Shown: piece after piece, positions 4,693 through 51,300 of the stretch
How positions within the stretch are numbered: the stretch's first letter is position 1
Layout of the letters: each line of letters opens with the position of its first letter
Translations under genes and position numbers: made by a program
Source: Utricularia gibba
Taxonomy: Eukaryota > Plantae > Magnoliophyta
Direction: 5' to 3'
Length of the DNA stretch: 64,000 nt
Assembly (NCBI GenBank): GCA_002189035.1
Contig: NEEC01000004.1
Coordinates: forward strand, 3,968,001-4,032,000
Notes under the pieces: model-generated
Seen by the model: only the letters and a program-made list of their open reading frames with translations
What the model was told of the DNA's origin: nothing
Databases searched by the model: none

Positions 4693-4851
4693 CGCTGCGG
4701 TTTCTAATTCGCTTGGTGCAGGTCGGGAACAGATTGCGGCAACGGCGTCGATTCTTCTTAATTGAATCATGCTGATTAGGACTGCCACGAATCGACGCTC
4801 CCTTCTGCGGCGAGTTCCCGCCTTGCATCAACTGAATCCGACACCGCGGTG
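4693..4851 (+). ncRNA. MIR168: microRNA precursor MIR168 (AGO1-regulating family)
   Basis: Mature miR168-5p TCGCTTGGTGCAGGTCGGGAA at 4709-4729 and star strand CCCGCCTTGCATCAACTGAAT at 4817-4837. The lower stem closes with cgctgcggt / accgcggtg. Confidence 0.97.
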
Positions 4852-13485: not shown

Positions 13486-15337
13486 ATGGGTTTGCCAAGA
13501 TTTACTCGTCTGAAGGAAGGGAACAAGGGAAGTAGTCTCCATCTTTATGTAGCTAATTGTGGACCTGCAGTTGGGCTGTCTTATGAAGCGATTGAATATG
13601 AATTTGGTAAATATGGGGGAATCCAAGGAGTCTACGCAGCTGATGATACGGGTACTCGTGTTATTGTCTCCTTCAAGGATATCATTTCTTCTCAGGCTGC
13701 GATGGAGGCATTAAATGGTAATGAGTGTCCTGGTCTTGGAGGACGCTCCCTGCAGATTAGGTATTCCATGGAAACCCTTGGTAAGGTACTGAGTTTATGC
13801 GATTAGTCATGTGAAATTCTTAAACGACAAGAATAATTTAAGGGTGTAGTTGTCCTTTTGGTTGTCTAAAGTTTCAAGTTTCATTGGAAGTAAAAAAATG
13901 GAGCCAAGTTATGGGAATGCTTAAAAAAGCTAGCACAGTTCTCTTCAGATTTTTCCCAAAACGTTTTTTTGGCACATATGTAAGTGTCTCCCATCATTGT
14001 CAGGTCAAGAACATTGCATCATTTCCTGTTTCAACTTCGGCTGCAGAAGTGGACATTCCTGGACTAATTCTATTGCATGACTTCGTTACTGCCGACGAAG
14101 AGCAAGTTAAGGGTTGATTTTTTATTCATATATCATCTTATAGAGATAAACTTGGAACTCATATCCAGAATATCTTCCTTTGCCCCATCTCAGGATCTTC
14201 TTACTGCAGTGGGTGGTAGACAATGGCAACATCTTGCAAAGAGAAGGGTTCAACATTTCGGATATGAGTTCTGCTATGATGTGAGTCCAGTGCTGGACTA
14301 TTTCTTCTATCTGCAATATCATTGCATCGAATCATTCATCTGTTTTTCTGGATAAACCACAACCCATAATGATGAAAGATTCAACCTCAACGTTCAGGAA
14401 GTTCATAGTCTCTATCTTCATTTTGCAGATAAGGAATGTTGATGCAAACCAGAATTTGGGCAAGCTTCCATCCTTCGTTTCTCCAATCCTTGATAAGATA
14501 ATGTTGTTGAACAACATTATTGATGGCATTGATTTGTCTTTGGATCAACTGACGGCAAGTGAATGCATGCTAACATGTTCCCAGTATATTCCTATGAATG
14601 CAGCTTGTGTATGATTAATGCTTAGAGCAGCTTCGCCTCTTTTTGACAACAAATAGGTTAACGAGTACCCTCCTGGTGTCGGTCTTTCTCCACATATAGA
14701 CACGCATTCAGCATTCGGGAACCTGATTTTCAGCCTTTCCCTGGCTAGTCCTTGCATCATGGAATTCAGAAAGTACACAAGCGGTATTTGGCAGGAAATG
14801 CCTATCCCTATTTCAGATGCAGAAGAGCAACTTCAAGAATTGAGGACAAACTTTGTGAGGAAAGCGATATATCTTCCTCCACGTTCAATGCTGCTGTTGT
14901 CTGGGGAAGCTCGATATGCATGGCATCATTATATTCCACACCACAAGGTGCTTGCTTTGTTCCCCAATGCAGCTGCTGAGAGTTGCCATAAGCTTTCACT
15001 TTCTGTTGACGTCTTTACCATGTGAGGCCTCTGAACGTTCATATAATGCAGATGGATCAAGTCAATGGTGAATCCATTCGGCGGGGTACAAGAGTCTCTT
15101 TCACATTTCGGAAGGTATGCTGATTAAATCTAGTAAGAAGTGAATCATGAACTTCCTGTTGCATTTCCTGTTTTTGTCAACAAGAGTTTGGTCTTTGCAG
15201 TTATGAGCCTTTCCTTATTTCATAACCCATACGTCAAAACTTGTGTTTCTTAGGTACGAAAAGGTCTCTGCGAATGTGAATTTTCTCAGTATTGTGACTC
15301 CCAAAGACCTGAAAGCTCACAGCAATCTACCACCTGA
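13486..15337 (+). CDS. ALKBH8: ALKBH8-like RRM + 2OG-Fe(II) dioxygenase (tRNA wobble uridine modification), 7 exons
   Basis: LYVANCGPAVG in the RRM, RRVQHFGYEFCY, VNEYPPGVGLSPHIDTH (HxD), RYAWHHYIPH, RVSFTFRK and C-terminal CECEFSQYCDSQ. One GC-AG intron with its donor at 14555. Confidence 0.92.
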
Positions 15338-15600
15338 GCAGAAAGTGATTCTTTTTTCATATTAATCTAGCAAGAGCAGTTTCCAGTTGTCGCCAATTCC
15401 TGCTTGTTCTTTTTGGTGGTATTTGAAGACACGCAGCCATAAACTGAAGCATTTTTAACGGATGTGATGACACAAATCCGATTATTTTTTCTCAAATATT
15501 CTCCTTGTTTGGCCAAACTCATGAAGTAGGTCAGCGAAACATCAATATTACAAAGGCAGTCGCCTTTATAGTGTGTAAATGGAGGCATTCGAAAACAGTT

Positions 15601-17760
15601 TCAGGTTGATGATGGATCATGCAGGCAAATATCTCCCTGGCAAAGCGGGCATACCCCCAGACAAGAATCATGATGAGTAAACAAATTTACAGGAGTGATA
15701 TGCGTTTCTCCTTGAGAAATAACACAGATAAACATGGATGCGTGTCGTTTGGAGGGAAGGTCAGAGACAAAAAAGGAAGAGCCCGTGAATTTCTTTGAGC
15801 CATATCTCAACGCATATTCTGTGAAACTCGTGATGACAAGGTAATATTCTCGTGCTGTCTCCTTCCGCGTAGTCAAACAAGCTATGTAGCATCTGTTCAT
15901 TATTTTACAAAGGCAACATATCAGTCTATTGCAGTTAATTGAAATGAAAGAAAAGGAGACAAGATTGATTTACAGTGCAGTGTCTTCCGTGGATTTCTTT
16001 TTCATTTTACTAAAAGACTCCTGTGGGAGGGAATCAACCACATCACTGGGGGCTAGAATGGATCTGATTGCTGATGAATCTGGTCGAAAACCTGATAATA
16101 GTGGTTCGTAAATATTTGTATTGAAAATGATGGAGAATAAGAGCCATTGATCATGGGTGGGGAACGCTTACCTCAAACAGTGCCTCTGTTGACTGTTAGC
16201 ACGACGCTTCTTGATACACTGGCTGTTGCATTTCCATCAATATTCACGTTTGCTTCCTGTGGGGTTATTTGGCAGTAACCTGGGCTCCGGGGTGTTGCCC
16301 AGATAAGATACATGACCTTTCGTGACTGGAAAAGCTCTCAAACTGCATTCCAGCCGCTGAACCCCATGCACCTGAGAGAAGCAGGGAGTTCTATTGAAAA
16401 TCTATACTGGTGTTCAACGTGAACCAAAACAATTATTGAGAGAGGAAGATATAGCTACGTGAGATATTATTCTTCTTCGGCGCCCAGGTGAATGTGATCT
16501 ATGTTCCAGGAAATCAGGATACCCGACCTCTCTTGCCCTGTATCGTGTTGTTTCCTGACAACCAGAAGACGCCTCCTGAATAAAGAGACGAGGATTTGTT
16601 GCAGCGTCCTCTTCTTCAAGGCCTTAAGCTTGCCTTGCAGAAACCTGACTATTAAGCCTCAATTCCTCAAATAGGAGAACTCTGAGCCAGGAGTTGTAGC
16701 TCGGCGGAGAAGTCTATCACAGAAGATGTCTTCCGATACTCGGTGTTCTACTAAAGTGAACATTTCGTTCTAAAGGTTCTCTAGCAGCTAGCTAATCTTC
16801 TGTCACACTCCCTACTTCCAGAAACATCAGAGTGATCTTGATTGAACTGAGGCAATGAATTCAGGCAATACCCCTCCACCCTTGGGTTGCTTCTACTCCC
16901 CAAGACATCATGAACATGTGAACGGTGATCTTCATCTTTGAAGGTGAAGGGCGACTTCGCATACTGTGGGTAAAACATCACAAGCTCGTGATCCAGCACT
17001 CTTTCTATGAACTACAGCATCAGCGGAGACAGTGAAATCATCTTTCTCATTTGATGCCCCAAAATCTCCTGCGGAGTTCCCAAATTGCGAGCTTGGGACA
17101 TACGAAGGCTTAAGTTTCTGAGATAGAAACTTAACTGAGAAAGGAATCCACTTCGAGGATTCAGTGTGCATGATGAGAATTCCCTAGAAGCAATCCCGCC
17201 TCCAGATTCAAATGAATTTGTGCAGTTTGTTTCGTTACACTGCTGATAATAACATGATTTGCGCTTTCTTGGGCGTCTAAGATCCTTGCGATTCTCTTTG
17301 CACGAAAATTCCCACACCTACGGTTTGCATTCAGGAGAATTGAAACATCATTTTAAAGAAGTTATGATTACTGATTGTCCAATATAATTCCAATCATATA
17401 TAGCTTCATGATTCACAATCGGGTATCTCCCGTGACAAGGAATGACATCAAAGTTACTAAGTCATCAAACACGTAGAAAGATTCTCATCAAAACTGGATC
17501 ATCAGAAAAGATGAAAAAAAGGCACTGTAACATCACCAGTGATGAGAAACACCCTGGAAACGAAGGGAGGCACAAAACTGAAAATCAAATGGCGGCTAAA
17601 GAAATCACCTTGGCATCCTCAGCGTCAAAAATAGGGACCGAAGGCAAGAAGAATTCAACCCCATACTTTGGGCGGATCCGCCTTCCATAGAAACGAACCA
17701 CACTACAGCGCCGGAGACGAATCGGAAGAGCCCAGCGGCATTATGCTTGCCGCTGCTAAG
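15601..17760 (-). pseudogene. Decayed RING-H2 E3 ubiquitin ligase gene (WLKEIHGVCPLC family)
   Basis: Minus-strand remnants AREPLERNVHFSRTPSIGR, TEALFE|VFDQIHQQS, APSDVVDSLP, CYI-LFDYAEGDSTRILPCHHEFHRICVEIWLKEIHG|VCPLCQGDIC. Many frameshifts and stops; the last intron lacks canonical GT/AG. The 5' limit is approximate. Confidence 0.8.
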
Positions 17761-29783: not shown

Positions 29784-31601
29784 CTTATTATGTATAATTT
29801 TTATCATTTATAAAGAATTCATTCATCAATTCAATGGATTTTCAAAACAATCAAGAGCATATTTCTTTTCAAAATGAGCATTTTGATCCAAAGGATTTTT
29901 CAATCATTTTGTCTCATCATAATGGTGAAATTATTGATGCAAATGAAGCTATTATTAAATATATATTCAAAAATGAGCCAGATCAACCTCGAAAAAATAG
30001 AGGAAATATGAATATATTGATACGTGAGTTTGGAAATACTCGCCTAATAATGGACTATTTCTCAATTAATGCCACCTACAATAATCATATATTCTGTCGA
30101 CATTTCATAATGTGTCATAGTTTGTTCGAACATATTATGTCCAATTTTTTGGAAATAATTACATATCTACAAGAGAAACCAGATGCAACCAGTTATGTTT
30201 CCTTAACAATAATGCATTACTACAATGCGAATGATGACATATATGTATGGTGTAGATGCTTGTAATTAATATTTTCAAATTAGTGAGTCTACTACTCTCA
30301 AATACTTAAGATCTTTTATAATTGGAATTCATACAATGTTTAGATAGAATATATTAGATGTTTCAATTCAAGTGACGTTTAAAAACTTCTGTCATGAGAT
30401 GAATAGTTTCCTTGCCGAAACTATCTTAAAAACAGAGTAAAGCATCTATCGATTCAGAAGGATAGAAACATTCTCCAAAGTTTGGCATAGAACATAGGTG
30501 ACATGAATGTTGAGTGCGTGGTAGGTGGCACCCACCTACTTCCATCGTAGTGGTTATAATGAGTACGATTTTAAGCAACAAGCATTAAAATTATACAAAT
30601 ATGAAGAGAAGAAAGATTTTGTAGACATCAAGTGTTGGAAAATCTTACGTTTAGAGCCGAAGTAGATGCCAGTACGTAAAATTACATTTTCTATTATTTA
30701 TCTACTACTTTATCATAATAGAGATGCATTTATATTTTTTTTGCTAGGTTCCAAAATCATCGAATGAAGGTTTCACAATGGGATCAAATGATTTAGTGAC
30801 TCAACCTTTACACACTTCATGTGTTGAAAAAGAAACAAGACATTTAGGATAAAAGGTGGCTAAACACAAATGAGAATAAAAATGAAGTGATGGACTCAAT
30901 TTCTTTCAAGAAGAAAGCATTTGGTAAATATATGAATAGTATCTCGGACCTTCTTCAGGATATTCAGAAGAAGAATGATGTGATGTGGGTATTTAATCAT
31001 ATATATTATGTGGATGTGCTTAATAAGTTATCTGAAAAAGATGTAAGTAAGATGACCCCTGAACAAAGGATCATGCATGAAATAGACTTTCAAGATTTTG
31101 CAAATGCAAGTTGTTAACTAGAGATAAATGTACATCGAAGGAGAACGTGGACGATGAGTTTGTGGATCTTTCTGATGATTGATAAGGTTTATGTAGCATT
31201 TGATGTTTGTATTTTTTTCATTCGAACAATATATGCAGTATTAAGTATTTCATTATTTTAATTTTGTTTCTTTATTTTGTTGATAAATGCAAATAAAAAG
31301 GATTGGTACCAATATAAGTGGTGCGAATTAAAAGGTTTAGTTGCAATACAAGTGATTAGTAGAATTCAATCTATTTGCCTATTTAAGGTTCTTGTATCCA
31401 TATGGTTTTCTTACTCGATTATTACCATGAATCCATCATTTCCCAAACCTTTTCATTTTTTTTGCTGAGGATGACATAGATTATAAAGCAATTGTTCAAG
31501 AAGTATATAATTTCTTCTTCAATGACTCAGATGAGGAGCCACAAGAACAAGAACCTTCTTGACAATGATGTGAACACAATCGTGAATTAGAGCATGAAAA
31601 A

Positions 31602-32660
31602 TTGATGGCTAATTATTTTTGCAACAATTGCACTCTCACAGATGAACAATTTCGCAGAAGATTTCGTATGAAGCATTCTTTATTTAAAAAAATTGTTGAG
31701 ACTATCAAATATCAAGATCCCTATTTTCAAGACAAGGTAGATTACATAGGTCGTCTAAGCTTAAGCCCTTTACAAAAGTGCATGGCTGCTATGCGTTTAT
31801 TAGCTTATGTTAACGAATATATTCGAATTGAAGAGGCAATATCCATCAAATGTATTTGTCATTTTGTTACTGTCATTCTCTCTTGTTTTTTAGAACACTA
31901 TTTATGATCACTCACAATAAAAGATTTAGAATGTTTGCTTGCTTGGGGCGAGGCTAGGGGATTTCTTGAAATACTTGGAAGTGCGGATTGCATGCATTGA
32001 GAGTAGAAAAATTTTCATGTAGCCTGGCAAGGTCCTTCGTAAACCATCACTCATGTTAGAAGTGGTAGCATCTGCTGATACATGGATATGACATGCATTT
32101 TTTGGAATACCAGGTGCGAATAACGATATCAATGTTTTATGGCATTCTTATTTACTAAATGAGTTACATAATGAGATTGCACCACGAATTCACTATCAAT
32201 GGTAATTATTATGACATGGTATATTATTTGGCCGACGGTATTTATCCGGAATGAGCTGTGTTTGTGAAATCTATTACACTGCCACAAGGTCGAAAAGCTC
32301 GTTGTTTTGCTTAATTCTAGGAGAGTGCTAGAAAAGACATAGAACGGACTTTTGGAATATTACAAAGCCAGTTTGGAATACTAACATCTCCTGGAAGAGC
32401 TTGGAATCAAAAAACTCTTGGAGATATTATGTATGCATGTATCATATTATATAATATGATTGTAGAAGATGAATGTCATGTCATTCATGAAGATAATATT
32501 ATGGATGAATACGAAAGATTTACGACTGTTGAACCATCGGAAATTTATAGAGATGCTGGGATCAATATGCCAAGTTATTTTGATCGAATAGAGCATTCAT
32601 GTAATATTTACATACATTGATGTCTAAAAAATGATTTGACCGAACATATTTGTACAAATT
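31602..32660 (+). pseudogene. PIF/Harbinger transposase remnant (DDE_Tnp_4 / plant transposon protein)
   Basis: QFRRRFRMKHSLF, LSPLQKCMAAMRLLAY, GSADCMH, LEVVASADTWI-HAFFG, NNDINVL, ERTFGILQ, IMYACIILYNMIVEDE, with stops and frameshifts. Confidence 0.9.
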
Positions 32661-33632
32661 TTAATTGATTTTTAGATTGTTTAGTAATTTCATTTTACGA
32701 TTTTGTAATTTTATTTATCAATTTCAATGTTTAAAATTGAAATATATTTTGAAATCTTTATTTTAATATTAGGATTTCTAGAAATGAATACAAATATAAA
32801 GGTAACTTACTAACGAAAACTCAATAATTCAATCATTTTCGGAAATTGATAAAGATGTTCTTAAAATCGATATTTAGAATTATTTATTCAATTGTTCGCA
32901 TATGAGATCATTAAACTCTAGTTAATATCATGCATGTTGGCATAATTTTATTTAATATGATTATTGAAGATGAAGTACATGATACTCAATCAAACCCTGA
33001 AAACTATGATCATATAACACAACAACCACATGATTTATTAAGACAAAATATTCATGCTTTTGATACATATATTTCTCGAGTTATAAAATTCAAGAAAACA
33101 AAATTACATAAATAATTGAAAACAGATTTGATTGAACATATTTGAAATTAATTTTGTTAATTTTATAATTTTTGTATTATGTATTTTCTAAATAATATTT
33201 TTTTTCTATTTTAAATAAAAATTATTATTGTATTTGATTAATGTGTAAATTAATATAAATTTAATAAATATAAATATTATAAAAGACATTGTTCAGATAG
33301 CAATGTGAATAATGATGAAAGTATGTTATGTATTATTTAATATTATATAATAATGAGATAGAATATAAAAATTATGAGGTGGACTATATATGGTTCGACA
33401 ACAATGTGGATGTCCTAATACTGGATTGAAAACATAGCCTACGTGTGTCTTAGTCAGGAAAAAGAAAAAAAATAATATTTTTTATTTAAACGTATTGCGT
33501 CGAAAGGAATTATTTCAAATTGGAAAATGAAATTGCCAAAATTGATAAAGCGTAATTCCTCGGCTGGTTTTTGGAGCGAATACAATTATCTAGGGCTGCG
33601 AGTTTCTATCGGCGTTTCTCTCATCGGACGGC

Positions 33633-36218
33633 ATGGCGGCGTCGGGGAGTCAGAGAGGCGGTGGGGGACGGCGGATGGAGGAAGAAGACGCGAAGCTGGT
33701 CTTCGAAACTTCGAAAGGCGTGGAGCCGATACTGAGTTTCGACGAGATGGGGATAAAAGAAGATCTCCTCAGAGGGATCTACAACTATGGGTTCGAGAAG
33801 CCTTCCGCTATTCAGCAGCGAGCGATTCTTCCGATTATATCTGGGCGAGATGTTATTGCGCAAGCGCAGTCTGGGACTGGGAAAACCTCAATGATTGCGC
33901 TTGCTGTTTGCCAAGTCGTTGACACCAAATCTTCCGAGTATGTCTCGGTTCTTGCTGACTTTATTTTTTTCTTTTGTTTTTGGCTTGACCCTGAATGTGA
34001 TTATTTCCGACGCCCTCTTCAACTTTGGGTGGGTTAGGCTTCATTTTTTTTTCTTCACATTTAAAGCTTGGTCCTCAAATTCTCGTGATAATTTGATGCT
34101 TGCAACTGCTAATGAGTTTGAAGGCTGCATGAAGATGAGTTTTTATAAGGGGAATTTTATATATTGACAGTGGAAGAATATGCTTAAGGGGTCCTTTTTA
34201 TTTCGTTTTTGGAACAGAGTCCAAGCGCTAATATTGTCACCTACAAGGGAGTTGGCTGCTCAAACGGAGAAAGTGATACTCGCTATTGGTGACTTTATTA
34301 ATGTGCAAGCGCATTCCTGCATTGGAGGTAAAAATCTTGGAGAGGACATAAGAAAGTTGGAGCATGGAGTTCAGGTGGTCTCTGGAACTCCCGGTAGAGT
34401 TTGTGACATGATCAAGAGAAGAACATTGCGAACTAGGGCAATTAAGTTATTAATTCTGGTATGTACCCTCATTAGCATTATCTGTTACTCCTTTCAATTG
34501 TTTTACTGTTCCGAGTCGACTGTTGCCATATTCTGATTTGTGAATTTATATGACGTTGTTAGGATGAGTCAGATGAAATGTTAAGCAGAGGTTTTAAGGA
34601 TCAGATATATGATGTTTACAGATACCTTCCTCCCGAACTTCAGGTGATTTTTCCTTCCACCCTCATGCTAGTTGCTTTTTTTTAAGTTTGTTTATCTGCA
34701 GAATGCCCATCAGTATGTATGGTTTGTTTGTTTGTATGTATGTTTGGTGACCGCTTACAATTGTACTCGATTTCTTTATGATTTTCTTTAATATAATTGC
34801 TTTTCTGTTTATTTCAATTATACCCCTTTTATTCCCTATATATCTGTTTCACAGTTTCAAATATCATTCCCACATGTTGTAACTTCAGGTTGTCTTGATA
34901 TCAGCCACCCTCCCAAATGAAATTCTGGAGATGACGAGTAAATTCATGACAGATCCTGTGAGGATACTGGTCAAGCGTGATGAATTGACGCTTGAGGTGT
35001 GCTTTGATACTTTTCAGCTTGAAAATTGTTTTAAAACATTGTTTACTGAACATGGCATCCATTAGTAATACTTGCCTTCTTTTCATTATCTTTTCTTCTC
35101 AGGGGATTAAGCAATTTTTTGTTGCCGTCGAAAGAGAAGAATGGAAATTTGATACTTTGTGTGATTTATATGATACTCTTACAATCACACAGGCTGTAAT
35201 CTTTTGCAATACAAAGAGAAAGGTATTTTATTGATAGAATCAATTGATTCAATGACAACATTTTACTAAATGCCTTCGTGTGCGTATCAAATATTTTGTT
35301 TTATCTGCTTGAGTTGATGTCTTCATTCTGGAAGAATGCGAACGAATATCCCCAATGATGAGTTGTGATTTGTATGGTAATTTCTGATTCTGTATTTAGG
35401 AACTGTCTGATGCATGCTGCTGTTTCTTTTGTGTAACAGGTGGATTGGTTAACGGCAAAAATGCGCGAAAATAACTTTACCGTCTCATCTATGCATGGTG
35501 ATATGCCCCAAAAGGAGCGGGATGCAATCATGGGAGAATTTAGATCTGGCCAGACTCGAGTTCTCATCACCACGGATGTTTGGGCGAGGGGACTGGATGT
35601 TCAACAGGTAATCAATCACTCATGCACTGAATATTATCCCTCTCAGCCTTCCAGAAAATCTAACCATCCGCTAAGTTTGTCTGGCCACCACATTAATGCA
35701 TGTTCATGTGGCCGAACCCTTTATGGTGGAAAGCTATGCTTTTTTGTTATGTTTAGTTTCATAATATCATATATGCATGTATGCATGTTCAACATCTTTT
35801 CGACATTGTGCATATAGATGATTGGTATACATGAGAATGACAATGTTGTTCATTTGTTACCATCAGGTGTCCTTGGTGATTAATTATGATCTTCCAAACA
35901 ACAGAGAAAACTACATCCATCGCATTGGACGATCTGGCCGTTTTGGTAGAAAGGTGATTCATACATTACAGAATTTCCGAAATATCATGTTTTATCTGAT
36001 GTGGAGTTTTTTTTCCCTACTTGTGCACATTTGATGGCGTATTTGATCTCCTGCTTGCTCAATCATTCCTAAGCAAAATCACTTGGTTTTATGTTCATTT
36101 TCAGGGTGTGGCCATAAACTTCGTCAAAAGTGATGATATCAAAATCTTGAGGGACATCGAGCAATACTACAGCACCCAAATTGATGAAATGCCCATGAAC
36201 GTTGCTGATTTAATCTGA
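33633..36218 (+). CDS. EIF4A3: eIF4A-III DEAD-box helicase (exon junction complex core), canonical copy, 8 exons
   Basis: [85 protein letters not shown]. Confidence 0.97.
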
Positions 36219-36903
36219 TGGGGCATTTTTTGCCAGGAGAAACTCTCGTACTGCGAGTATTGTTTGCTTCCCATTGCGTGTAAGCAAGTAGCCTTGTATC
36301 CCATAGGTTTGATTTCAGTTTCCTTCGTGTTGATTACTGATCTACAGTAGTTAAATATTTGGCTAGTTTGAATTTCTTGACATACCTAAATTTTCCACAA
36401 TAGTTTTCGCCCACCACAATCAGCAGGCTGGTAATCATCCTAGATTTTGATTCAAACTTCAATCAACGTGTCGGTCCTTGGCTGTGTGCGGAGCTGAGAC
36501 ACCAAAGCATTCCTGGCCTCGTAGCCGAAACTACGATCGTTTGGAAGAGTTTCGGTAGGAACTGGTCCTTCTACTGCTGGACCTCCGAATGTTCCTTGGA
36601 GGCACCCCGGGATCAGTTATAAAAATGTCACCTCATCTCGAGCGGTGGTCAAAAGGCCTCCCGTGAAACTCTAAAACACTGAAGTAGTTTGAGCCATTAA
36701 CAGGATGAAGAAAGCATCAGGGGGCTTAATAACTTCAAAGGAAACAAGATTCAGCTAAACGAATCTCAAGACATTCAACACACTTGTATGAGAAATCACT
36801 GAAAAGGGCAAGAATTTGATGAAAAGTTGTACCCAACGAGTTCAATTTTACCTGGAATCTACACAATGCCATCCGCAGCAGCCCTATAAAGGAGTAGATT
36901 TTA

Positions 36904-38256
36904 TTAGGCAATTTCATTTGGATCTCCTGTGTACTCGGCAATCTGCTCAAGCTTCACATGCAGAAACTCTTGTGTGTCTGCATCTCGAACAACGCCTGTC
37001 TCCTTCTCCAAATCTCTTTCCACCAAACTCCCATAGACACCCTCGTGCTTACCATACAATATAAGCACGTAACCCCCACGTTTTGGAAGTGCAGTCTCTA
37101 ATAGGTCCTGTTCTACACCTTGTAACAACTCCCTGCTCTCATCCATTGAAATGTCACAAATTCCAGGCCCTACAACGTCAACAACAACCCCCTTTTTCAA
37201 GAAAAATTTCCCTTTTTTGAAGTCCTTGCTAATAACTCTTACTCTTATATGATTCCTAAGCCAACTTGCCTGCAGGTTTCTATCTTTTTTATCTTTTGGG
37301 CCCTTCTTCGAAGAAGAAGCTTTTTTATCTACAGTATCATCCTTCTCCTTAATTTTCAATTCTCTTAACTTTCTCAGACACTGCTGCTCTTCTACAGATC
37401 CTATCTCCGCAACATCAGCGCTCTGAATCTTGATCCTCTCACTGCTTCTTGTTGTCCTTATGATCAACAAATCTCCACCGCCCCTCACCTCCTGAATTTT
37501 ACCCTTCACTCCCATCTTACTTCCCTTCACAATTCTAACTTCCTTTCCCACACTAAATCCTTTGTCTTCGCTCCCACTAGCTACCACGTTTCCATTATCA
37601 ACGTTCTCACCCGCAACACCATCTGTTTTCACTCTGTTTTCTAAAACCTCCTCTGTAAAACCCAAACCACCTCTCCCCTTCTTCTTGGTGAGCTCAAAGA
37701 CGTTCACATCCTCTCTGGCATTGCGCCCTATTCCCATTCCCTCTTTCCAACCATAACCAGCCATCAGAGCAGCTCCAAACCCCTCCACCGGCACATCCTC
37801 ATACTGATCCATCCCCAAATCATCACGCAGCATCTTCATATCCTCCCTAAACTTCCTCATCTCCATCTCCGCAATCGTTTCACTACCCCGAGCCCTAGCA
37901 CCACCCTGCCCGCCGGCTGATGGCGCGCGAACATTGAGACCATAACTCATAGACGCATCAGATGGATCCGCATTCGACCCGGGATCCAACTCAAACAAAA
38001 GAGTGCCATCCCCGACACCCGGTTGATTAATGGGCGGGAGATTATAGAGATTCTTAAGCTTTTCGTTGAAAGGCTTGTCCGGGATTGGAGCAATAGGTTT
38101 GATCTTCGGTTCAGACGTCGGAACCTCAACGGGAAGAAACTCCGTAACGTACTTTTTGCTCGAAGAATCATCTCCCCCAGCATCAGATGCCGACGACGCG
38201 GGCCTCTTAACTCGATTAGACTGCGATTTTGAGCTGATTGAAAAGGAAATACTCAT
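36904..38256 (-). CDS. MOS2: MOS2 (G-patch + two KOW motifs; GPKOW/Spp2-like splicing factor), intronless, 450 aa
   Basis: G-patch VPVEGFGAALMAGYGWKEGMGIGRN...GRGGLGF and C-terminal WLRNHIRVRVISK...LETALPKRGG KOW region. Confidence 0.92.
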   Translation of the reverse strand: MSISFSISSKSQSNRVKRPASSASDAGGDDSSSKKYVTEFLPVEVPTSEPKIKPIAPIPDKPFNEKLKNLYNLPPINQPGVGDGTLLFELDPGSNADPSDASMSYGLNVRAPSAGGQGGARARGSETIAEMEMRKFREDMKMLRDDLGMDQYEDVPVEGFGAALMAGYGWKEGMGIGRNAREDVNVFELTKKKGRGGLGFTEEVLENRVKTDGVAGENVDNGNVVASGSEDKGFSVGKEVRIVKGSKMGVKGKIQEVRGGGDLLIIRTTRSSERIKIQSADVAEIGSVEEQQCLRKLRELKIKEKDDTVDKKASSSKKGPKDKKDRNLQASWLRNHIRVRVISKDFKKGKFFLKKGVVVDVVGPGICDISMDESRELLQGVEQDLLETALPKRGGYVLILYGKHEGVYGSLVERDLEKETGVVRDADTQEFLHVKLEQIAEYTGDPNEIA

Positions 38257-38575
38257 CCTGAAGAATGAATTCGAAGATACCTGAATGAATCAATCGAACC
38301 TTTCCGCTTGACTCGCGTGGACCAAGAAAACCTAATCAGTGTTTCCGTTTGGGGGCGAATTCAACGATCAAACAATTGTTGCTTGTGATTGGGCTTTTGT
38401 ACCTTTTTTCGGCCCATTGGGCTTGTGTTTGGGTTTCAACAGAACTGTTAACTGTTTCTCGCCCCCCTTGCCTTCCCTCTGAAACATTTTCAGTTCTCAG
38501 TCACGCATCAAAAGCTTTTGCTTTTCTGGTCTTATTTGGATTCAGACTCTACGAAGAATCGCTCAATTGGACGGC

Positions 38576-40992
38576 ATGGCGGCGTCGGGAAGAAAAAAAA
38601 TAGGTGGGGGCCGGCGAGTGATGGAGGAAGACGATGCGAAGCTGATCTTTGAGGCTTCCAAAGACGTGAAGCCGATACTCAGCTTCGACGAGATGGGATT
38701 AAACTGGGATGTCCTCAGAGGAATCTACAACTACGGGTTCGAGAAGCCTTCCAGCATTCAGCAGCGAGCGGTTATGCCGATTATTTCGGGTCGAGACGTT
38801 ATTGCGCAGGCGCAGTCTGGAACTGGAAAAACGTCGATGATTGCGATTGCTGCTTGTCAGGTCGTGAACACCAAGTCTTCCCAGTACGTTTTGGTTCATT
38901 TAAAGTTCTTCTTATTGTTTGTCCTTTTTTGCATTGTGGGGGGGGGGGGGGTAGTTTTGTTTATAGGTGACCCTGAAAGTGATTATTTGCAACACCGGCT
39001 TCAAGCTTACGCATCCTTCCATTTGAATAGTATCCCAATTTCCCGCCTGTAGCTTTGAATATTGCTGTCCTGAATCAGCATGATAAATTGGAAACCGTTT
39101 ACTGCTTATTGATTTTTGTGTAGCATGAAGTGTTATAGTTTTATGAAATGAGTTTTATATATGGGCGTTGTTTCTGTCGTAAAGGTCTTGTTCTTATTTA
39201 TTTCCTATTTGTAACAGAGTTCAAGCGCTTATATTGTCACCTACGAGGGAGTTGGCTGTTCAGACGGAGAAAGTAGTATTGTCAATTGGCGAATATGTCG
39301 GTGTGAAAGCCCATTCCTGTACTGGAGGTAAAAATCTTGGCGAGGATATCAAAAAGTTGGAGGGTGGAGTTCAGGTGGTCTCTGGGACCCCAGGTAGAGT
39401 TTGTGACATGATCAAGAGAAGAACTTTGCAGCCTAAGGCAATCAAGTTGCTAGTTTTGGTAAGCTTTCTACATGTTAATTTTATGAGTTCCTCCAACCTG
39501 CAATTGCTATACTGTTCCAACTCGATTTGTTTTGATATTCTGATGTTGTGAATTCATATGATGTTGTTAGGATGAGTGCGATGAAATGTTGAGCAAAGGT
39601 CTCAAGGATCAGATCTATTCTGTGTACAGATATCTTCCTCCTGAGATTCAGGTGAACATTTTTTTCAACACGTTAAAATGATTTTCCCTCATCAGAGTTC
39701 TTTAACCTGTTTGATTCTTTAGAATGTACCTATCCATTGTGTGTATGACTTCTTTATTGGAAATGTTGATGAATCGCACAAATGTCGAACCCCCTGTTTT
39801 TTTTGTTTCCCTTAGTAGAATTGTTTTCGTTTCGGTCCTTCTAATAACACATTCGTGCTCGCAATTTAATCATTTGGAAGTTTCTGCTTCAATCATCATT
39901 CGCTGAAATATATGAATTTCAGATTGTCATGATATCAGCCACCCTACCAGATGAAATAATGGAGATGACAAGCAAGTTTTTGACAGATCCAGTGAGGATA
40001 CTTGTGAAGCGTGATGAATTAACTCTTGAGGTGTGTCTTTCACCTATAAAAAGCATCCGAGACATTCTTTGCATCAACCGAACATAGCATCCATCTGTAA
40101 TTGTTGCTTGCTGTTCTGTCTTTTCTCCTCAGGGGATCAAGCAATTCTATGTTGCTGTTCAAAAAGAAGAATGGAAATTTGATACTTTATGTGATTTATA
40201 TGAGACTATTACAATATCTCAGGCTGTAATATTTTGCAACACAAGGAAAAAGGTATTTTGGTTGCCCATATGCTTTCATACCAATGAATTACAACTTCTG
40301 TGCACAGTTTCTGTCCATGGATTCAAAAGCTCTCTAAGCCTGCATTTTTCCCTTGTGTGATAGGTGGATTGGCTAACCAAAAAAATGCGAGAAATCAACT
40401 TTCCCGTGTCATCAATGCACGGAGACATGCCCCAGAAGGAGCGTGATGCAGTCATGGGAGATTTCCGGTCTGTCCGGACAAGAGCTCTCATCACCACAGA
40501 CATTTGGGCCAGGGGGCTGGATGTTCAACAGGTGCACTCATTCATCTCCAATGCCGCCAACATCCATATACGGCTGACCCTTTTACAATGGAAAAGCTAC
40601 TAGAGCAATGCTATATCATATGCTTGGTCCCCAGTTTCACAGATGACCACACACCATGCATTGTGGAACATCAATCACTTTACGTGGGAATGATGAAGCT
40701 GTAATTCTTATACCCTTTTCAGGTGTCCGTGGTATTCAACTACGATCTTCCAAACAACAGAGAAAATTACATTCATCGTATCGGGCGGTCTGGCCGTTTT
40801 GGGAGGAAGGTAGTTCTAGAATCTGGAACTAGAACTCATTTTTTTCTTTCCAACTCAATGTGGATCCTCATTTTTCAGGGTGTGGCCATAAACTTGGTCA
40901 AGAGCGATGATATGAAAAGCTTGAGGGACATCGAGCAGTTCTACGGCATAAAAATAGGTGAAATGCCACTGAATATTAACGAGTTAATTTGA
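38576..40992 (+). CDS. EIF4A3: Second, diverged eIF4A-III paralog, 8 exons, intact frame
   Basis: Same intron positions as the first copy, all GT-AG, no stop or frameshift. Motif II reads DECD (39571-39582) and the C-terminus reads [16 protein letters not shown]. Confidence 0.93.
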
Positions 40993-41127
40993 AGGCTTTT
41001 TGGCGAGGGAAAAAGGTGTTGTAAGTGGCTTTTGTTGCGCTAGGGGTATTTATTCTTTTTAAAATAGATTTATGTATCCATTTCAATAGCTAACTATTTA
41101 TTTTGTATTTTTCTAAAAAAGTGGATT

Positions 41128-41245: not shown

Positions 41246-42363
41246 TTCTCTTTTGTTCGAAGATTTGTTTTTGAAATTATTTCAATTCTATGAAATGAAT
41301 TTTATCAAAAGGGATTTTTGATAATTGATTATATCATATAAATTTCTAATTATATTCATATTTTTTATAAATTGTAATTTTAAATCATCTTGCTAGTATA
41401 AATCATTGTATTTTATTAATAATCATTGTTCCTTTTCTAACAAATTATATTTTATAATTTTAAATCATAATATTATTATAAGTCTATTTTAACTGTTGTA
41501 GTAATATAAAATATCATGGATTTATGGAATATTTTATAGTATGGATAATTTATAAAGTATAATTTGATAATATGTATAGATTCTTTATTTATTATTTTTT
41601 TTACTTTAAATTATTAAAAAATCATTTACAATATATGTATATATATATATATCTAAATGATTAGAACAAATATTAGAATAATTTTTGAAGTAATTTTTTC
41701 AAACGTTACGAATATATCCTTGTGAAAATATTTAATATTAAAAAAAAGGAAAATCCTGAATGACCAAAACAGTCTTTTTACGGATTCTGGGTATCAAGGC
41801 CCATATGATGACTTGGCCCAACCTCAACTCAAGTGTTTGGGCCAGTTTTTAGGTAACGTCTCTTCAGATCGGTGAGCTGCCTGCCCTTCGCAGTTCGATG
41901 TCTATGCCGTCGTCGTGACTCCCGCCGCCGCCGCATTCCCGCTGAAGATCAAAATCGTAATTTCTCTATATCGGTAAAACTCGGTCTTCTCCTCTTCCCT
42001 TTTCCATAATCTCACCGCCCCTGTCTGAGTTTGTTCCTCGTAGGGTCTTTTCTGCAACCGAGCTAGAAGATATAAATGTTCATGAAAATTTGGGTATTCT
42101 GCATCGCAAGTTTTCCTGGTTTCCCATGTCGAATTTCCTTGTCCTTTTAGGGTATTTTTATGATGACTTTGGTGAAGTTATGGTGTTTGATTTGGGAAAA
42201 TTCTCCAAAGTTTGGTTTCTATTTTTCTGGCGTTTGTTCGTCTGGTTTATGATTAGGGCATGCGGATTTTTCACGTTTGCATCATATTATGCTCAACTGT
42301 TGCTACCTATAAACAAAATGTTTTAACTCAGGTGGAAAGAAACCCGTTATTACTTAGCAAGAA

Positions 42364-43255: not shown

Positions 43256-44252
43256 TTGCCTGTGCAGGGAAACAACACACTTCTCATATTGAAATCTATG
43301 GGATATTTTTTTCACGTGCTCCATTTTTTCTGGGCTGCTGGTGTTGTAGGATTGACCCAGCCTAGGTCTTGTAAGATCTATTACAGCTTTGGCAAGAGTT
43401 AAATTCACGAATTGTTATAAAAATTAATTTAAATTGTGATTTAAAATGTGGTTCTTATTAGGGTAGACTTTGTTCGTGATATCTGAGATTATAGTTAGTA
43501 TAAGGAATTTAATCTCTAAATTTTAAAATTATATCATTGACTTTTTAATTTACTTTTTTATAAACAAGTTGATTTCAAACTTATTAAATTATATATTTAA
43601 TCTTTTATATTATCAAAACTAATCAATTCTAATATTTAATATTATTATAATAGTACATCACTATTAAACAGTATCTATAATTTACATTATTTCTACATTG
43701 ATAGTTTTAACCTTATTAAACCTTGAAAATCATTATATGCAATTGCGATATAACCCTAACAAAGGATTTTGATTTGTCAAATTTCATATGCGAATATGAA
43801 AAATCTTATCATAAAATTTTATTGAATGTGAAATAAAAAATGATTTACGATGTTATGAATCATATCACAATTTAAAAATTCAAAAAAATTATTCAAATCT
43901 TACTTGAACGGCTCTGACAATTTAAGATATATCTTTTACAATGTTAAAATTTAGATATTAGATTCATTATACTAAATGAAATTTGAAGTAGTGTTTTTGT
44001 AATTTTTACGTTTTTATTTATTCAATTGTAATTTAATTATAATTTAATATCTTTATAATAAAAATATTAAAAAATGTAGAGAGAGTACTGTTGTGTTGTA
44101 CGTACTGGAAACACGCGAGTCTCACGTGCATTCGAAAAGCATTGGTGCGATGTCTAACCGGAGATGGGGCTTACTGGAACCGGTGACCTCTGGCTCGAAT
44201 TCCTCATTTGAACCGGGGTCTCATTAGGGGAGCCGAGCTGATTGGGTTGCCC

Positions 44253-46078
<1,826 letters not shown>

Positions 46079-48343: not shown

Positions 48344-51300
48344 TCCCCCCCCCCCTTTCTTAAGGAAGATTCATCCTTGAATCTGTATCCATGTCAAAAA
48401 GAAACAAATCAGCAATATTGAAAGTTGAATGAACATAATACTCACCTAGTAAATCTAGTTTGTATGTATTATCATTCACGCGCTCAACAATTTGGAAAGG
48501 GCCATCTCCACGAGTTAGAAGTTTTGACTTCCTCTTGGTGGGAAATCTCTCCTTCCTGAGATGCAGCCAAACCCAATCTTCAGATTCAAATACAATTTTG
48601 CGTCTCCCCTTATTTGCTACTGATGCATACTTTGCATTATTGGATTCAATCTGTTATTTCACCTTTCATGCAATCTTGTGATTGCTTCAGCTCTCTTCTT
48701 GTCATCTAAACTAACTTTTTCATCACAAGGCAAAGGTAACATATCCAAAGGTGTAAGAGGATTAAAGTCATAAACCACTTCAAATGGAGATAATTTAGTA
48801 GTGAGATGCATGGTTCTATTGTAAGCGAACTCAACAAGTGGCAAACATTCCTCCCATGTTTTAAGATTTGGTTTAATCATAATCCTAAGTAAGGTAGAAA
48901 GTGTGCGATTAGTTATCTCAGTTTGCTCATCGGTTTGAGGGTGACATGTTGTTGAGTACAACAGCTTAGTGCCAAGTTTACTCCACAGAACTCTCCAAAA
49001 GTGACTGAGAAATCTTGCATCTCGATCAGAGACAATAGTGAGGGGCATACCATGAAGTCTAACAACTTCCCTAAAGAAGAGATCAGCCACATGAGATGCA
49101 TCATCAGTTTTGTGATAAGGGATAAAATGTGTCATCTTTGAAAATCTGTCTACAACAACAAAAATTGAATCTCTACCCCTTTGGGTACGAGATAAGCCTA
49201 AAACAAAATCCATAGAAATGTCCACCCACGGTTGAGAAGGAGTAGGGAGTGGAGTATACAAACCATTAGGGGCAGTGGTTGATTTAGCCTTCTTACAAGA
49301 GATATATCTATCACAAATTCTTTCAACATCCCTTCTCATGTGTGGTCAAAAGAAATGTTGGGTGAGAGTATCAAAAGTCTTCTTAACACTAAAATGTCCC
49401 ATTAATCCACCACGATGAGCTTCCCTAACAACCAAATCACGTATGGAACAACAAAGAATGCACAACTTATCTTTCCTACAAAGAAAACTATCTTTCCTGA
49501 AGAATAGTCTAGATGGAGCAAGTTCACATGCCTTATAAATGTCTCCAAAATCATGATCATGAGCATATAAGTCAATAATGCTAGCAAATCCAAGAATTCT
49601 TGCATCAAAATTGGCTAAAAGTGTATACCTTCGAGATAAAGCATCAGCTACCACATTCTCCTTACTTTTTTTGTATTTGATCACATATGGGAATGTGTCA
49701 ATGAATTCCACCCACTTAGCATGTCTTCTATTCAGCTTTCCTTGACCCTTCAAATGTTTGAGCGACTCATGATCAGTATGTATCACGAACTCCTTAGGCC
49801 ACAAGTAGTGCTACCATATCTCCAAAGCCCTAACCAATGCATACAACTCCTTGTCATACGTTGGATAGTTGAGGGTGGCACCATAAAGCTTCTCACTAAA
49901 ATAAGCAAGTGGACATCCATTTTGCATCAATACAACACCAATGCCTGAACCTGATGCATCACATTCAATTTCAAAAGTATCAGAAAAATTTGGAAGTGCT
50001 AGAAGAGGTGTTGAGCAAAGCTTATCCTTAAGTTGTTGGAAGGCATGTTCCTACTCGTCTCCCCAATGAAATGGATGATTTTTCTTGATCAATTGAGTGA
50101 GGGGTGCTGCTATAGAGCTGAAATCCTTAACAAACCGTCTATAGAAATTCGCTAAGCCATGGAAACTCCTAACTTCACCAACTGATGCAGGTGTTGGCCA
50201 TTCCTTAATTGCTCTCCCTTTCTCTTCATCGACAGCTACTTCTGCATCACTTACAACATATCCAAGAAAAGAGATACTATTCATGCAAAAAAGACATACT
50301 TCTTGATATTAGCAAACAACTTCTCTTTTCTAAGAGTATCTAACACATTCTTCAAATGCCCTGCACGTTCCTCAAGACTCTTGCTATAAATCAGAATATC
50401 ATCAAAATAAACAACTACAAATCTACCTATAAAAGTCCTAAGAACATGATTCATCAATCTCATAAAGGTGCATTAATTAAACCAAAAGGCATAACAACCC
50501 ACTCATACAAACCAAACTTAGTTTTAAAAGCGGCTTTCCACTCATCACCTTCCTTCATTCTAATCTAATGATATCCACTTCTCAAATCAATCTTACTAAA
50601 AACACAAGCATCATACAATTCATCAAGCATATCTTCAAGTCTAGGGATAGGATGTCTATACTTCATTGTAATGTTGTTGATGGCACGACAATCAGTGCAC
50701 ATACGCCAAGTTCCATCAAACTTAAGAACCAATAACACTAGCACAGCGCATGGGCTCATACTCTCACGCACAAATCCTTTAGACATCAATTCCTCAACTT
50801 GTCCTTGTATTTCCTTCATCTCCTCTGGATTAGTTCGATATGCTGGTCTGTTTGGGAGCTGTGCTCCAGGCACAAGGTTAATTTGATGCTCAATCCCTCT
50901 GATGGGAGGTAATCCTTGAAGTTCTTCTGGAAATACATCTTAATATACTTGTAAGAGAGACACAATACAAAATGGAATGAGTGGATCATTGTTAGAGAAA
51001 GTAGTAACTTTATCCTTGTACATAAGTAGAAGGAATGGGTGTCTAGTATGAAGTGATTGTCTAATCTCACTTGGCCTAGCTAAGAGACTCGCATTCTTCT
51101 TCTCAATTTCTAACACTCTTTTGTTTCCACTTTTTGTTTTGCACTCATTCTCACTCTTTTTTCCACTCAATTCCATCCCCTCTCTTCTTTCCTCTCCACT
51201 TTTTCGAATCTTTTTTTCACTCATTTTCACTCCACTCTCCTTTCGCTTTTCTCCACTCATCTTTTCTCCCTTAGACACGACCTCCTTGTGCTTTCCATTA

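What the first reader, a model, noticed from the sequence alone, without database searches (positions are those of the whole stretch)
38576..40992. Intact but strongly diverged eIF4A-III paralog with changes at predicted EJC partner surfaces
Seen: all 8 exons, splice sites and ATP/RNA motifs are retained, but dozens of residues differ from the canonical copy 5 kb away in a normally very conserved protein. Examples: DESD>DECD; QIYDVY>QIYSVY; KLEHG>KLEGG; LRTRAIK>LQPKAIK; [10 protein letters not shown]>[10 protein letters not shown]; FRSGQTR>FRSVRTR; STQIDEM>GIKIGEM. Established (residue numbering recalled, to be verified): the C-terminal QIDE acidic pair (human D401/E402) is needed for MAGOH-Y14 binding, and the CDLYD helix binds MIF4G partners such as CWC22; eIF4A-I has LYE there. 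Inference: this may be a sub- or neofunctionalised helicase that binds Mago-Y14 poorly or works outside the EJC.
Basis: partly seen in the sequence, partly recalled or inferred. Interest (0 to 1): 0.75.

Follow-up and report, generated by a model that had tools for sequence, protein, structure and literature searches.

The report
Fast-evolving expressed eIF4A-III duplicate
A bladderwort-relative plant genome carries, 2.4 kb downstream of its normal eIF4A-III gene (the helicase at the core of the exon junction complex), a second copy that is intact, transcribed and correctly spliced. That copy has taken about 76 amino-acid changes while its twin took almost none, and they are densest in the tail that normally grips Mago-Y14, so it may be a natural separation-of-function variant, though this is untested.

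Summary
**Observation:** confirmed. Copy B (38576-40992, + strand) has 8 exons, 7 GT-AG introns and no stop codon, and encodes 408 aa. It differs from canonical copy A (33633-36218) at 77 of 408 aligned positions.

**Expression:** RNA contigs from two independent studies splice all seven B introns exactly as modelled.

**Origin:** A and B are sisters, nested in Lamiales next to Genlisea.

**Asymmetry**
- The protein tree gives A an end branch of 0 and B one of 0.47.
- Amino-acid changes are 2-4 unique to A against 66-71 unique to B.
- Fourfold-degenerate sites are symmetric, so mutation rate does not explain the difference.

**Selection**
- The codon model gives ω_B about 0.32 against a background of 0.028 (p = 7e-26).
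- ω_B = 1 is rejected (p = 1.3e-5).
- The changes are conservative overall.
- Every helicase motif is kept. DESD becomes DECD.

**Partner surfaces**
- The last 17 residues, identical between human and copy A, carry 9 changes, including D401G.
- D401K/E402R abolishes MAGOH-Y14 binding in human cells.
- The CWC22-binding acidic pair keeps its charge (D270 kept, D273E).

**Verdict:** B is a real, selected and strongly relaxed lineage-specific paralogue. Weakened or altered exon junction complex (EJC) assembly is a reasonable inference but has not been tested. No B-like orthologue was found, but the database holds no close relative of this species.

The parts
38576..40992 (+). Copy B: the diverged eIF4A-III paralogue, 8 exons, 408 aa. 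Exons are 38576-38883, 39218-39458, 39571-39651, 39923-40030, 40133-40252, 40364-40531, 40723-40809 and 40879-40992.
   Evidence: Gene model with all GT-AG introns and no stop codon. All 7 introns are seen spliced in RNA contigs of runs X1, X3 and X5. The exon pieces hit Pfam DEAD and Helicase_C.
33633..36218 (+). Copy A: the canonical eIF4A-III gene, 8 exons, 407 aa. It sits in the ancestral position.
   Evidence: Gene model. It is 95-96% identical to Lamiales eIF4A3 and has an end branch of 0 in the tree. Its neighbour is MOS2 on the minus strand, as in Orobanche.
38510..38575 (+). Transcribed 5' UTR of B, at least 66 nt. It has no similarity to the region upstream of A beyond about 10 nt before the ATG.
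   Evidence: Contig pieces start at 38510 or 38516 in X1 and X3. Similarity between A and B is limited to 33623-36242 versus 38566-41012.
40939..40989 (+). C-terminal tail of B (residues 392-408, human 395-411): [17 protein letters not shown] against [17 protein letters not shown] in copy A and in human. Nine of 17 residues are changed, including D401G at 40957-40959.
   Evidence: Enrichment has Fisher p = 0.0012. D401K/E402R abolishes MAGOH-Y14 binding (PMC4268817, PMC10639049).
39363..39365 (+). Gly152 of B, at the position of human Y155 and of His in copy A. This lies in the MLN51/BTZ contact pair D154/Y155.
   Evidence: D154K/Y155A fails to bind MLN51 (PMC10639049). The position varies among plants (H, Y, N, F), but none of the 49 has G.
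39429..39437 (+). Q-P-K in place of R177-T178-R179 (human numbering). R and T are invariant in the 49 canonical plant sequences, and the human sequence also reads R-T-R here.
40193..40204 (+). D-L-Y-E (human D270-L-Y-D273): the CWC22/MIF4G-binding acidic pair. D270 is kept and D273 becomes E, so the charge is retained.
   Evidence: D270 contacts CWC22 K174 and D270G weakens binding (PMC7261170). D270K/D273K cannot bind CWC22 (PMC4482076).
40388..40405 (+). R-E-I-N-F-P (human R298-E-A-N-F-T303; copy A has R-E-N-N-F-T). This is the 'REAN' patch of the CWC22 interface and carries two changes, N>I and T>P.
   Evidence: REAN>HARD strongly reduces CWC22 binding (PMC7261170). The third residue of the patch already varies between plants and human.
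39571..39582 (+). Motif II reads DECD (plant canonical DESD, human DEAD).
   Evidence: The D-E-x-D residues are kept.
40472..40474 (+). Val323 of B in place of the Gly of 'FRSG' (human G326). The Gly is invariant in the 49 plant sequences and is also present in human eIF4A3 and in the eIF4A1-like sequence.
38861..38883 (+). A 23-nt stretch removed when the alternative 5' splice site after 38860 is used. That isoform is frameshifted.
   Evidence: Joint 38857(+3)->39215(+3), which skips 357 nt, seen in run X3 only.

Best explanation
**What B is.** B is a lineage-specific, DNA-level local duplicate of the eIF4A-III gene. It was copied with its introns but essentially without flanking sequence, and it landed between MOS2 and the RsmH-like methyltransferase gene. 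It runs from a promoter and 5' UTR of its own.

**How it has evolved.** A has kept the ancestral protein almost unchanged since the duplication. B has been released from most, but not all, of the very strong constraint on this protein.

**What B has kept (shown from sequence):** an open reading frame, correct splicing, all ATP-binding and RNA-clamping motifs, and the acidic pair that docks MIF4G partners such as CWC22.

**What B has changed (shown from sequence):** about 76 mostly conservative replacements. They are denser in the C-terminal helix that contacts MAGOH (9 of 17 residues, including D401G). One more falls on the residue equivalent to the BTZ-contact Y155.

**Most likely consequence (inferred).** B is still an ATP-dependent RNA-binding DEAD-box protein that CWC22-type partners can hold. 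MAGO-Y14 locks it onto RNA less well or differently. It would then act as a sub- or neo-functionalised helicase working partly outside the canonical EJC core, at lower expression than A.
For: **Structure and expression**
- Gene models are intact.
- All 7 B introns are spliced at the predicted sites with 0 mismatches in X1 and X3, and also in X5 from a second study. A poly(A) loose end shows that at least run X6 holds RNA, and the intron-less spliced contigs indicate the same for X1, X3 and X5.

**Origin**
- A and B are sisters (SH-aLRT 90) next to Genlisea. A has an end branch of 0 and B one of 0.47.
- A and B share two derived residues against all six outgroups.
- dS between A and B is 0.69, against 1.3-1.8 or more to other Lamiales.
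- There is no gene-conversion tract.
- A sits next to MOS2 as in Orobanche. The methyltransferase gene downstream of B matches Primulina.

**Selection**
- Branch codon model: ω_bg = 0.028 and ω_B = 0.315, better than one ratio with p = 7e-26. ω_B = 1 is rejected with p = 1.3e-5.
- Tajima test: 2-4 changes unique to A against 66-71 unique to B, while fourfold sites are symmetric.
- Replacements are conservative: mean BLOSUM62 0.89 against -0.36 expected under neutrality, P < 5e-5.
- The chance of no stop codon under neutral evolution is about 5e-7.
- Invariant positions are hit 12% of the time and variable positions 28%.

**Motifs and surfaces**
- All helicase motifs are present.
- C-terminal tail enrichment has p = 0.0012.
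- Human numbering was verified.
- Mutant phenotypes come from PMC4268817, PMC10639049, PMC7261170 and PMC4482076.
Against: - No binding, ATPase or localisation data exist for B.
- E402 is kept, and D401G is a loss of charge rather than the charge reversal that was tested in human cells.
- The Y155-equivalent position already varies among plants.
- ω in the C-terminal tail is not above 1 (pairwise 0.20), so nothing shows adaptive change.
- B contigs have roughly 4-8 times lower depth than A contigs in the same runs. B was not assembled in the low-coverage run X6 (contig depth is a poor measure).
- One run shows only a frameshifting alternative donor for intron 1.
- G326V and R177Q/T178P hit deeply conserved residues and could impair folding or activity.
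- No orthologue of B was found that could show constraint within a B clade.
- Other notes of this scan report further fast-evolving tandem duplicates in this genome, so this may be a general tendency of the genome.
Confidence: 0.5

Rival explanations
1. B is a redundant spare copy drifting under relaxed constraint. It still does the same job as A, only less well, or it contributes nothing. It is on a slow path to pseudogenisation. The cluster of changes in the C-terminal tail is then just where a relaxed protein tolerates change.
For: - ω_B is 11 times the background but shows no signal of positive selection.
- B contigs have lower depth than A contigs, and a frameshifting splice variant exists.
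- Deeply conserved residues are hit: G326V, R177Q, T178P, D203S.
- Other notes report more fast-evolving duplicates in this genome.
Against: - ω_B is significantly below 1 (p = 1.3e-5).
- Replacements are strongly biased towards conservative ones, and the frame has stayed open with a neutral probability of about 5e-7.
- All catalytic motifs and all 14 splice sites are intact, and splicing is correct in two studies.
- The copy has persisted for a dS of about 0.3 on its own branch.
Confidence: 0.3
2. B is an adaptive neofunctionalised copy, driven by positive selection on partner surfaces. One route is co-evolution with a diverged MAGO, Y14 or BTZ paralogue. Another is escape from, or decoying of, a pathogen that recruits eIF4A3.
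For: - The protein-level asymmetry is extreme while the silent rate is symmetric.
- Changes are enriched in a tail that is identical from human to plants.
- Potyviruses are reported to recruit host eIF4A3 (title and abstract of PMC12781882).
- Adaptive evolution of duplicated MAGO-Y14 in rice is cited in PMC6280879.
Against: - No region has ω above 1.
- With a single lineage, no branch-site test is possible.
- No diverged MAGO or Y14 gene is noted for this genome so far (a blank there means little).
Confidence: 0.12
3. B acts as a regulator or decoy. It keeps CWC22/MIF4G docking but fails to be locked by MAGO-Y14, so it competes with A for CWC22 and tunes EJC loading.
For: - D270 is kept and D273E retains the charge, while D401G and 8 more tail changes hit the MAGOH side.
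- Human D401K/E402R does not form EJCs (PMC4268817).
Against: - This is pure inference.
- The REAN patch and T303 of the CWC22 interface are also changed.
- The low apparent expression argues against strong competition.
Confidence: 0.08

Closest known systems
Canonical plant eIF4A-III (Arabidopsis AtRH2/eIF4AIII; rice OsRH2 and OsRH34), the EJC core helicase
   Same: - The same 8-exon gene structure as copy A and as the Genlisea, Salvia, Primulina, Penstemon, Orobanche and Coffea orthologues.
- All DEAD-box motifs are present.
- B nests inside the eIF4A3 clade as sister of copy A.
   Different: - The two rice paralogues are described in the title of PMC4830029 as highly similar, and canonical Lamiales proteins are 95-96% identical to A.
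- B is only 78-81% identical to any of them.
- ω_B is about 11 times the background.
- B has a changed MAGOH-contact tail.
Human eIF4A3 D401K/E402R, an engineered EJC-assembly-deficient mutant
   Same: B carries a natural change at D401, inside the same short acidic motif of the C-terminal helix.
   Different: B has D401G with E402 retained, not a double charge reversal. It carries 8 further tail changes. The effect on binding is untested.
Fal1 (S. cerevisiae eIF4A3 orthologue) working with Sgd1/NOM1 in 18S rRNA maturation
   Same: It is a precedent that an eIF4A3-type helicase works outside the EJC with a MIF4G cofactor (PMC7237134, PMC6351623). B keeps the MIF4G-docking acidic pair.
   Different: Nothing shows that B is nucleolar or acts in ribosome biogenesis. 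I could not fetch the Fal1 sequence to compare its tail.
eIF4A-I/II, the translation initiation helicase
   Same: Several B replacements match the residue seen in the eIF4A1-like sequence P0126. Examples are LYE, T178P, N134G, F255Y and V336I.
   Different: B is clearly an eIF4A3 by phylogeny and by overall identity. PDB matches to eIF4A3 score higher than those to eIF4A1 for every exon piece tested.

Membership tests
DEAD-box RNA helicase (SF2) | Motifs Q, I, Ia, Ib, II (D-E-x-D), III (SAT), IV, QxxR, V and VI, all in order | tested here: met
   All were found in B at the expected positions. Motif II reads DECD. Pfam DEAD and Helicase_C match the exon pieces above the curated cut-offs.
eIF4A-III (DDX48) orthogroup | Phylogenetic placement within eIF4A3 rather than eIF4A1/2 | tested here: met
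   B is sister to copy A inside Lamiales eIF4A3. Its best PDB matches are human eIF4A3 chains for every exon piece tested.
eIF4A-III as EJC core subunit | Acidic pair D401/E402 in the C-terminal helix, needed for MAGOH-Y14 binding | tested here: not met
   B reads G-E. D is present in 47 of the 49 canonical plant sequences (N in the other two) and in the human sequence. Nine of the last 17 residues are changed. The functional consequence was not tested.
eIF4A-III as EJC core subunit | MLN51/BTZ contact at D154/Y155 | tested here: inconclusive
   Plants have E-H (or Y, N, F) here and B has E-G. The position is already variable in plants.
eIF4A-III as EJC core subunit | CWC22 MIF4G docking through D270/D273 and the R298-N301 patch | tested here: inconclusive
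   D270 is kept and D273E keeps the charge. The patch reads REIN against RENN in plants and REAN in human, and T303 becomes P.
eIF4A-III as EJC core subunit | Stable ATP-dependent clamping on RNA, with ATPase inhibited by MAGO-Y14 | not testable with these tools
   This needs biochemistry or complex modelling. The spliced B protein has no reference and could not be handed to the structure tools.
Processed or unprocessed pseudogene | Stop codons, frameshifts, lost splice sites, ω about 1, no transcript | tested here: not met
   None of these is present. ω_B = 1 is rejected.

The most novel reading that the evidence does not exclude
B is a natural separation-of-function eIF4A-III. It keeps ATPase and RNA binding and CWC22/NOM1-type MIF4G docking, but it can no longer be locked onto RNA by MAGO-Y14. 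It would then act as a freely cycling helicase, for example in a Fal1-like role in ribosome biogenesis, or as a modulator of EJC loading. That would split the two ancient roles of eIF4A3 between two genes.
Probability: 0.2. Interest if true: 0.7.

Novelty: new variant of a known kind. Interest (0 to 1): 0.5.

Why it matters
eIF4A-III is one of the most conserved eukaryotic proteins. Its last 17 residues are identical in human and in copy A. Its EJC role and its non-EJC role in rRNA processing have only been separated by engineered mutants.

B is an expressed, selected natural copy that keeps the catalytic core and has rewritten the MAGOH-contact tail. It is therefore a ready-made test case for three questions:
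- which surfaces are needed for which role;
- how an essential single-function complex subunit escapes constraint after duplication;
- how plants tune EJC loading and NMD.

If B is merely a decaying spare, it still gives a clean, quantified example of extreme asymmetric evolution after duplication: 0 against about 76 replacements at an equal silent rate.

Tried and rejected
1. **Searching with the whole B protein.** The spliced 408-aa sequence has no reference, and I did not type it. I searched exon pieces by reference instead.
2. **Word search with B exon 1.** It returned only short fragments, all closer to A than to B.
3. **The large representative search with B exon 1.** It gave odd fragments and chimeras and no clean full-length eIF4A3. 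Its only use was to supply scaffold ids.
4. **Aligning all 8 B pieces to one scaffold (alignment A1).** MAFFT misplaced the pieces, so I discarded it. I tested offline which scaffold sets place them correctly. I then used P0124 + P0133 + B exons 1-3 (alignment A2) for the second word search.
5. **Looking for a B-like orthologue.** None appeared among the 120 best full-length hits. None lay within ±10 kb of eIF4A3 in Salvia, Primulina or Penstemon, nor downstream of the gene on the 6.4-kb Genlisea contig. This absence is weak evidence. The window's MOS2 protein finds nothing above 65% identity, so no close relative is in the database.
6. **Gene conversion between A and B.** Rejected, because divergence is even along the CDS.
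7. **Faster mutation in B.** Rejected, because fourfold sites are symmetric.
8. **Positive selection in the C-terminal tail.** Not supported, since ω there is not above 1.
9. **The Olea CDS.** The annotated model spans 32 kb and did not splice cleanly, so I left it out.
10. **Papers PMC3845097 (CWC22-eIF4AIII structure) and PMC3093123 (NOM1).** Neither is held, so no full list of interface residues was available.
11. **The joint 40028->35101 and the excess depth on B exon 2.** I read both as contigs of A mis-laid on B, because A exons 1-4 lay outside the stretch I submitted. I could not re-test this.

Full report
**1. What is there.**

The window holds two eIF4A-III genes on the + strand. I rebuilt both from the sequence.
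- Copy A spans 33633-36218 and encodes 407 aa.
- Copy B spans 38576-40992 and encodes 408 aa.
- Each has 8 exons in the same phases and 7 GT..AG introns, with no stop codon or frameshift.

A single-exon MOS2 (G-patch/KOW) gene lies between them on the minus strand, at 36904-38256.

Similarity between the two copies runs only from about 10 nt before the ATG to about 20 nt after the stop codon (33623-36242 versus 38566-41012). It passes through the introns. B is therefore a DNA-level copy of the gene body, not a retrocopy, and it has a different upstream region. No third copy is in the window.

**2.

A and B differ at 76 residues plus one 1-aa indel. That is 81.1% protein identity and 83% CDS identity, with NG86 dS 0.69 and dN 0.096.

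Alignment of B exon pieces to PDB chains of human eIF4A3 gives human number = B + 3 = A + 4. The recalled D401/E402 numbering is therefore correct.

Pfam DEAD and Helicase_C match the exon pieces. Motifs Q, I, Ia, Ib, II, III, IV, QxxR, V and VI are all in place. Motif II reads DECD instead of the plant DESD.

**3. B is expressed and correctly spliced.**

Five public runs of the same organism, from two studies, hold 31-39% of the sampled words of the B gene region. That is about what the exons alone would give.

I laid contigs of four runs on 35050-41040. All seven B introns are removed exactly at the modelled sites in X1 and X3 (study P1) and in X5 (study P2). X1 and X3 show no mismatch.

Two things indicate that these runs are RNA. 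The contigs lack introns, and a loose end with a poly(A) tail sits at 36367, the 3' end of A, in run X6.

Other details:
- B transcripts start at or before 38510 and run past 41040.
- X3 shows, for intron 1, only an alternative donor after 38860. That isoform removes 23 nt and shifts the frame.
- Contig depth for B is about 7 against 54-135 for A in X1 and X3, and 28-45 against 112-195 in X5.
- The low-coverage run X6 holds A but not B.
- Contig depth is a poor measure of expression, so I only say that B appears to be expressed at a lower level than A.
- X5 differs from the window at two B sites, one synonymous and one V234L, and at three synonymous A sites.

**4. Origin.**

The spliced protein has no reference, so I searched with exon pieces and with an alignment of two cotton scaffolds plus B exons 1-3.

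A is 95-96% identical to canonical Lamiales eIF4A3, with Genlisea aurea the best match. B is 78-79% identical to all of them, and no hit is closer to B than to A.

In a 62-row tree, A and B are sisters (SH-aLRT 90) and together sit next to Genlisea (93). A has an end branch of 0 and B one of 0.47.

Three further points support a duplication within this lineage:
- A and B share two residues, M223 and N355, against all six outgroups.
- dS between A and B (0.69) is far smaller than dS to any other species (1.3 or more, largely saturated).
- Divergence is even along the CDS, so there has been no gene conversion.

Synteny shows which copy is ancestral. Orobanche has eIF4A3(+) followed by MOS2(-). 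Primulina has eIF4A3, then PORR, then a Methyltransf_5 gene. The window has A, MOS2(-), B, and further on a Methyltransf_5-like gene. A therefore sits in the ancestral slot and B is the inserted copy.

No second full copy lies within ±10 kb in Salvia, Primulina or Penstemon, nor downstream of the gene on the 6.4-kb Genlisea contig.

The window's MOS2 protein finds nothing above 63-65% identity (Sesamum, Paulownia, Genlisea). The database therefore holds no close relative, and the lack of B-like orthologues says little. Other notes of this scan call the genome a small Lamiales or bladderwort-family genome and report further fast-evolving tandem duplicates in it. My tree agrees with the placement.

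**5. Selection.**

I extracted exact CDSs for six outgroups, using their annotated proteins to guide splicing. I then fitted a GY94-F3x4 codon model of my own on an 8-taxon tree.

| Model | ω values | Test |
|---|---|---|
| One ratio | 0.045 | reference model |
| B branch free | background 0.028, B 0.315 | 2ΔlnL = 110.8, p = 7e-26 against one ratio |
| B branch fixed at 1 | background 0.027, B = 1 (fixed) | rejected, 2ΔlnL = 19.0, p = 1.3e-5 |
| Three ratios | A 0.0025, B 0.34 | p = 0.003 against the B-free model |

Branch dS is about 0.3 for both copies. dN is about 0.096 for B and below 0.008 for A.

Supporting results:
- Tajima's test on residues gives 2-4 changes unique to A against 66-71 unique to B (p about 1e-14). 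Fourfold sites are symmetric (10-16 against 13-21), so the asymmetry reflects selection and not mutation.
- B's replacements are conservative. Mean BLOSUM62 is 0.89 against -0.36 expected from random single-base changes (P < 5e-5).
- Positions invariant in 49 canonical plant sequences are hit less often (30 of 245) than variable ones (46 of 162).
- Under neutrality at d = 0.29, about 14.5 nonsense changes are expected, so the chance of none is about 5e-7.

B has therefore been under real purifying selection for most of its history, at about a tenth of the normal strength.

**6. Where the changes fall.**

The changes are spread over both RecA domains at 15-18% of residues. The last 17 residues carry 9 changes (Fisher p = 0.0012).

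That tail, [17 protein letters not shown], is identical in copy A and in human. B reads [17 protein letters not shown], which includes D401G.

What published mutants show for the surfaces concerned:
- **MAGOH-Y14:** D401K/E402R prevents MAGOH-Y14 binding and EJC formation in human cells (PMC4268817, PMC10639049).
- **MLN51/BTZ:** H>G in B falls on the equivalent of Y155, and D154K/Y155A loses MLN51 (PMC10639049). This position already varies in plants.
- **CWC22:** D270 contacts K174 of CWC22. D270G and REAN(298-301)>HARD weaken binding (PMC7261170), and D270K/D273K abolishes it (PMC4482076).

On the CWC22 side, B keeps D270 and has D273E. The patch reads REIN (plants RENN), and T303 becomes P.

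Other hits on deeply conserved residues are R177Q/T178P, D203S, G326V and I388S.

ω in the tail is not above 1. The cluster therefore fits loss of a local constraint as well as it fits adaptation.

**7. Reading.**

These points are shown:
- B is a real, transcribed, correctly spliced and selected paralogue with an intact catalytic core.
- Its evolution is extremely asymmetric compared with A.
- Its MAGOH-contact tail has been rewritten.

These points are inferred:
- Locking by MAGO-Y14 is weaker or altered.
- MIF4G docking is probably retained.
- B may therefore have a role partly outside the canonical EJC.

eIF4A3-type helicases do have such a role. Fal1 works with Sgd1/NOM1 in 18S rRNA maturation (PMC7237134, PMC6351623).

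The main rival is plain relaxation of a redundant copy. I could not exclude it without B orthologues or biochemistry.

**8. Limits.**

- The whole B protein could not be given to the search, structure or atlas tools, so no model of B or of its complexes was made.
- The codon model is my own script, not codeml.
- Outgroup dS is saturated.
- Expression rests on assembled contigs, not raw reads.
- The joint 40028->35101 and the high depth on B exon 2 are best read as contigs of A mis-laid on B, because A exons 1-4 lay outside the stretch I submitted.

Noticed in passing
window 36134-38357 (- strand): The MOS2 (G-patch/KOW) gene lies between the two helicase copies. Its ORF is 38256-36904. It is transcribed and has a 173-nt intron (36679-36851, GT..AG on the minus strand) in its 3' UTR, about 52 nt past the stop codon. 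That distance is borderline for EJC-dependent NMD. Its transcript contigs reach 36134, so they overlap exon 8 and the 3' UTR of copy A in antisense.
   Followed up: partly
window 38857-39218: In run X3 the only assembled junction for B intron 1 uses an alternative donor after 38860. This is 23 nt upstream of the main donor and shifts the frame. It may be an unproductive, NMD-prone isoform of an EJC-related gene.
   Followed up: no
window 36367: A loose end with a poly(A) run in X6 marks a polyadenylation site of copy A, about 150 nt after its stop codon.
   Followed up: no
window 40028 -> 35101: Contigs in X3 and X5 join the end of B exon 4 to the start of A exon 5. This is most likely an A contig whose exon-4 tail was laid on the paralogous B exon, because A exon 4 was outside the stretch I submitted. 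A real trans-splice or back-splice was not excluded.
   Followed up: no
window 4691-4854: A MIR168 precursor (Rfam RF00677, 93.9 bits) is the only Rfam match in the window at gathering threshold.
   Followed up: no
window 29834-33115 and 48659-49804: Harbinger/PIF-like transposase ORF fragments lie just upstream of copy A. Ty3/gypsy integrase and RT-like ORFs lie on the minus strand downstream of the RsmH-like gene.
   Followed up: no
window 44208-46078: An RsmH/MraW-type (Methyltransf_5-like) gene lies downstream of B. It is syntenic with the gene two places after eIF4A3 in Primulina eburnea (L003 17651-21460).
   Followed up: partly
L005 (Olea europaea) 10001-42151: The annotated Olea eIF4A3 model spans 32 kb. 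A complete set of exons lies at 10001-16367, with extra partial copies of exon 6 (about 20642) and exons 7-8 (41405-42148). The model probably borrows its last exons from a partial duplicate.
   Followed up: no
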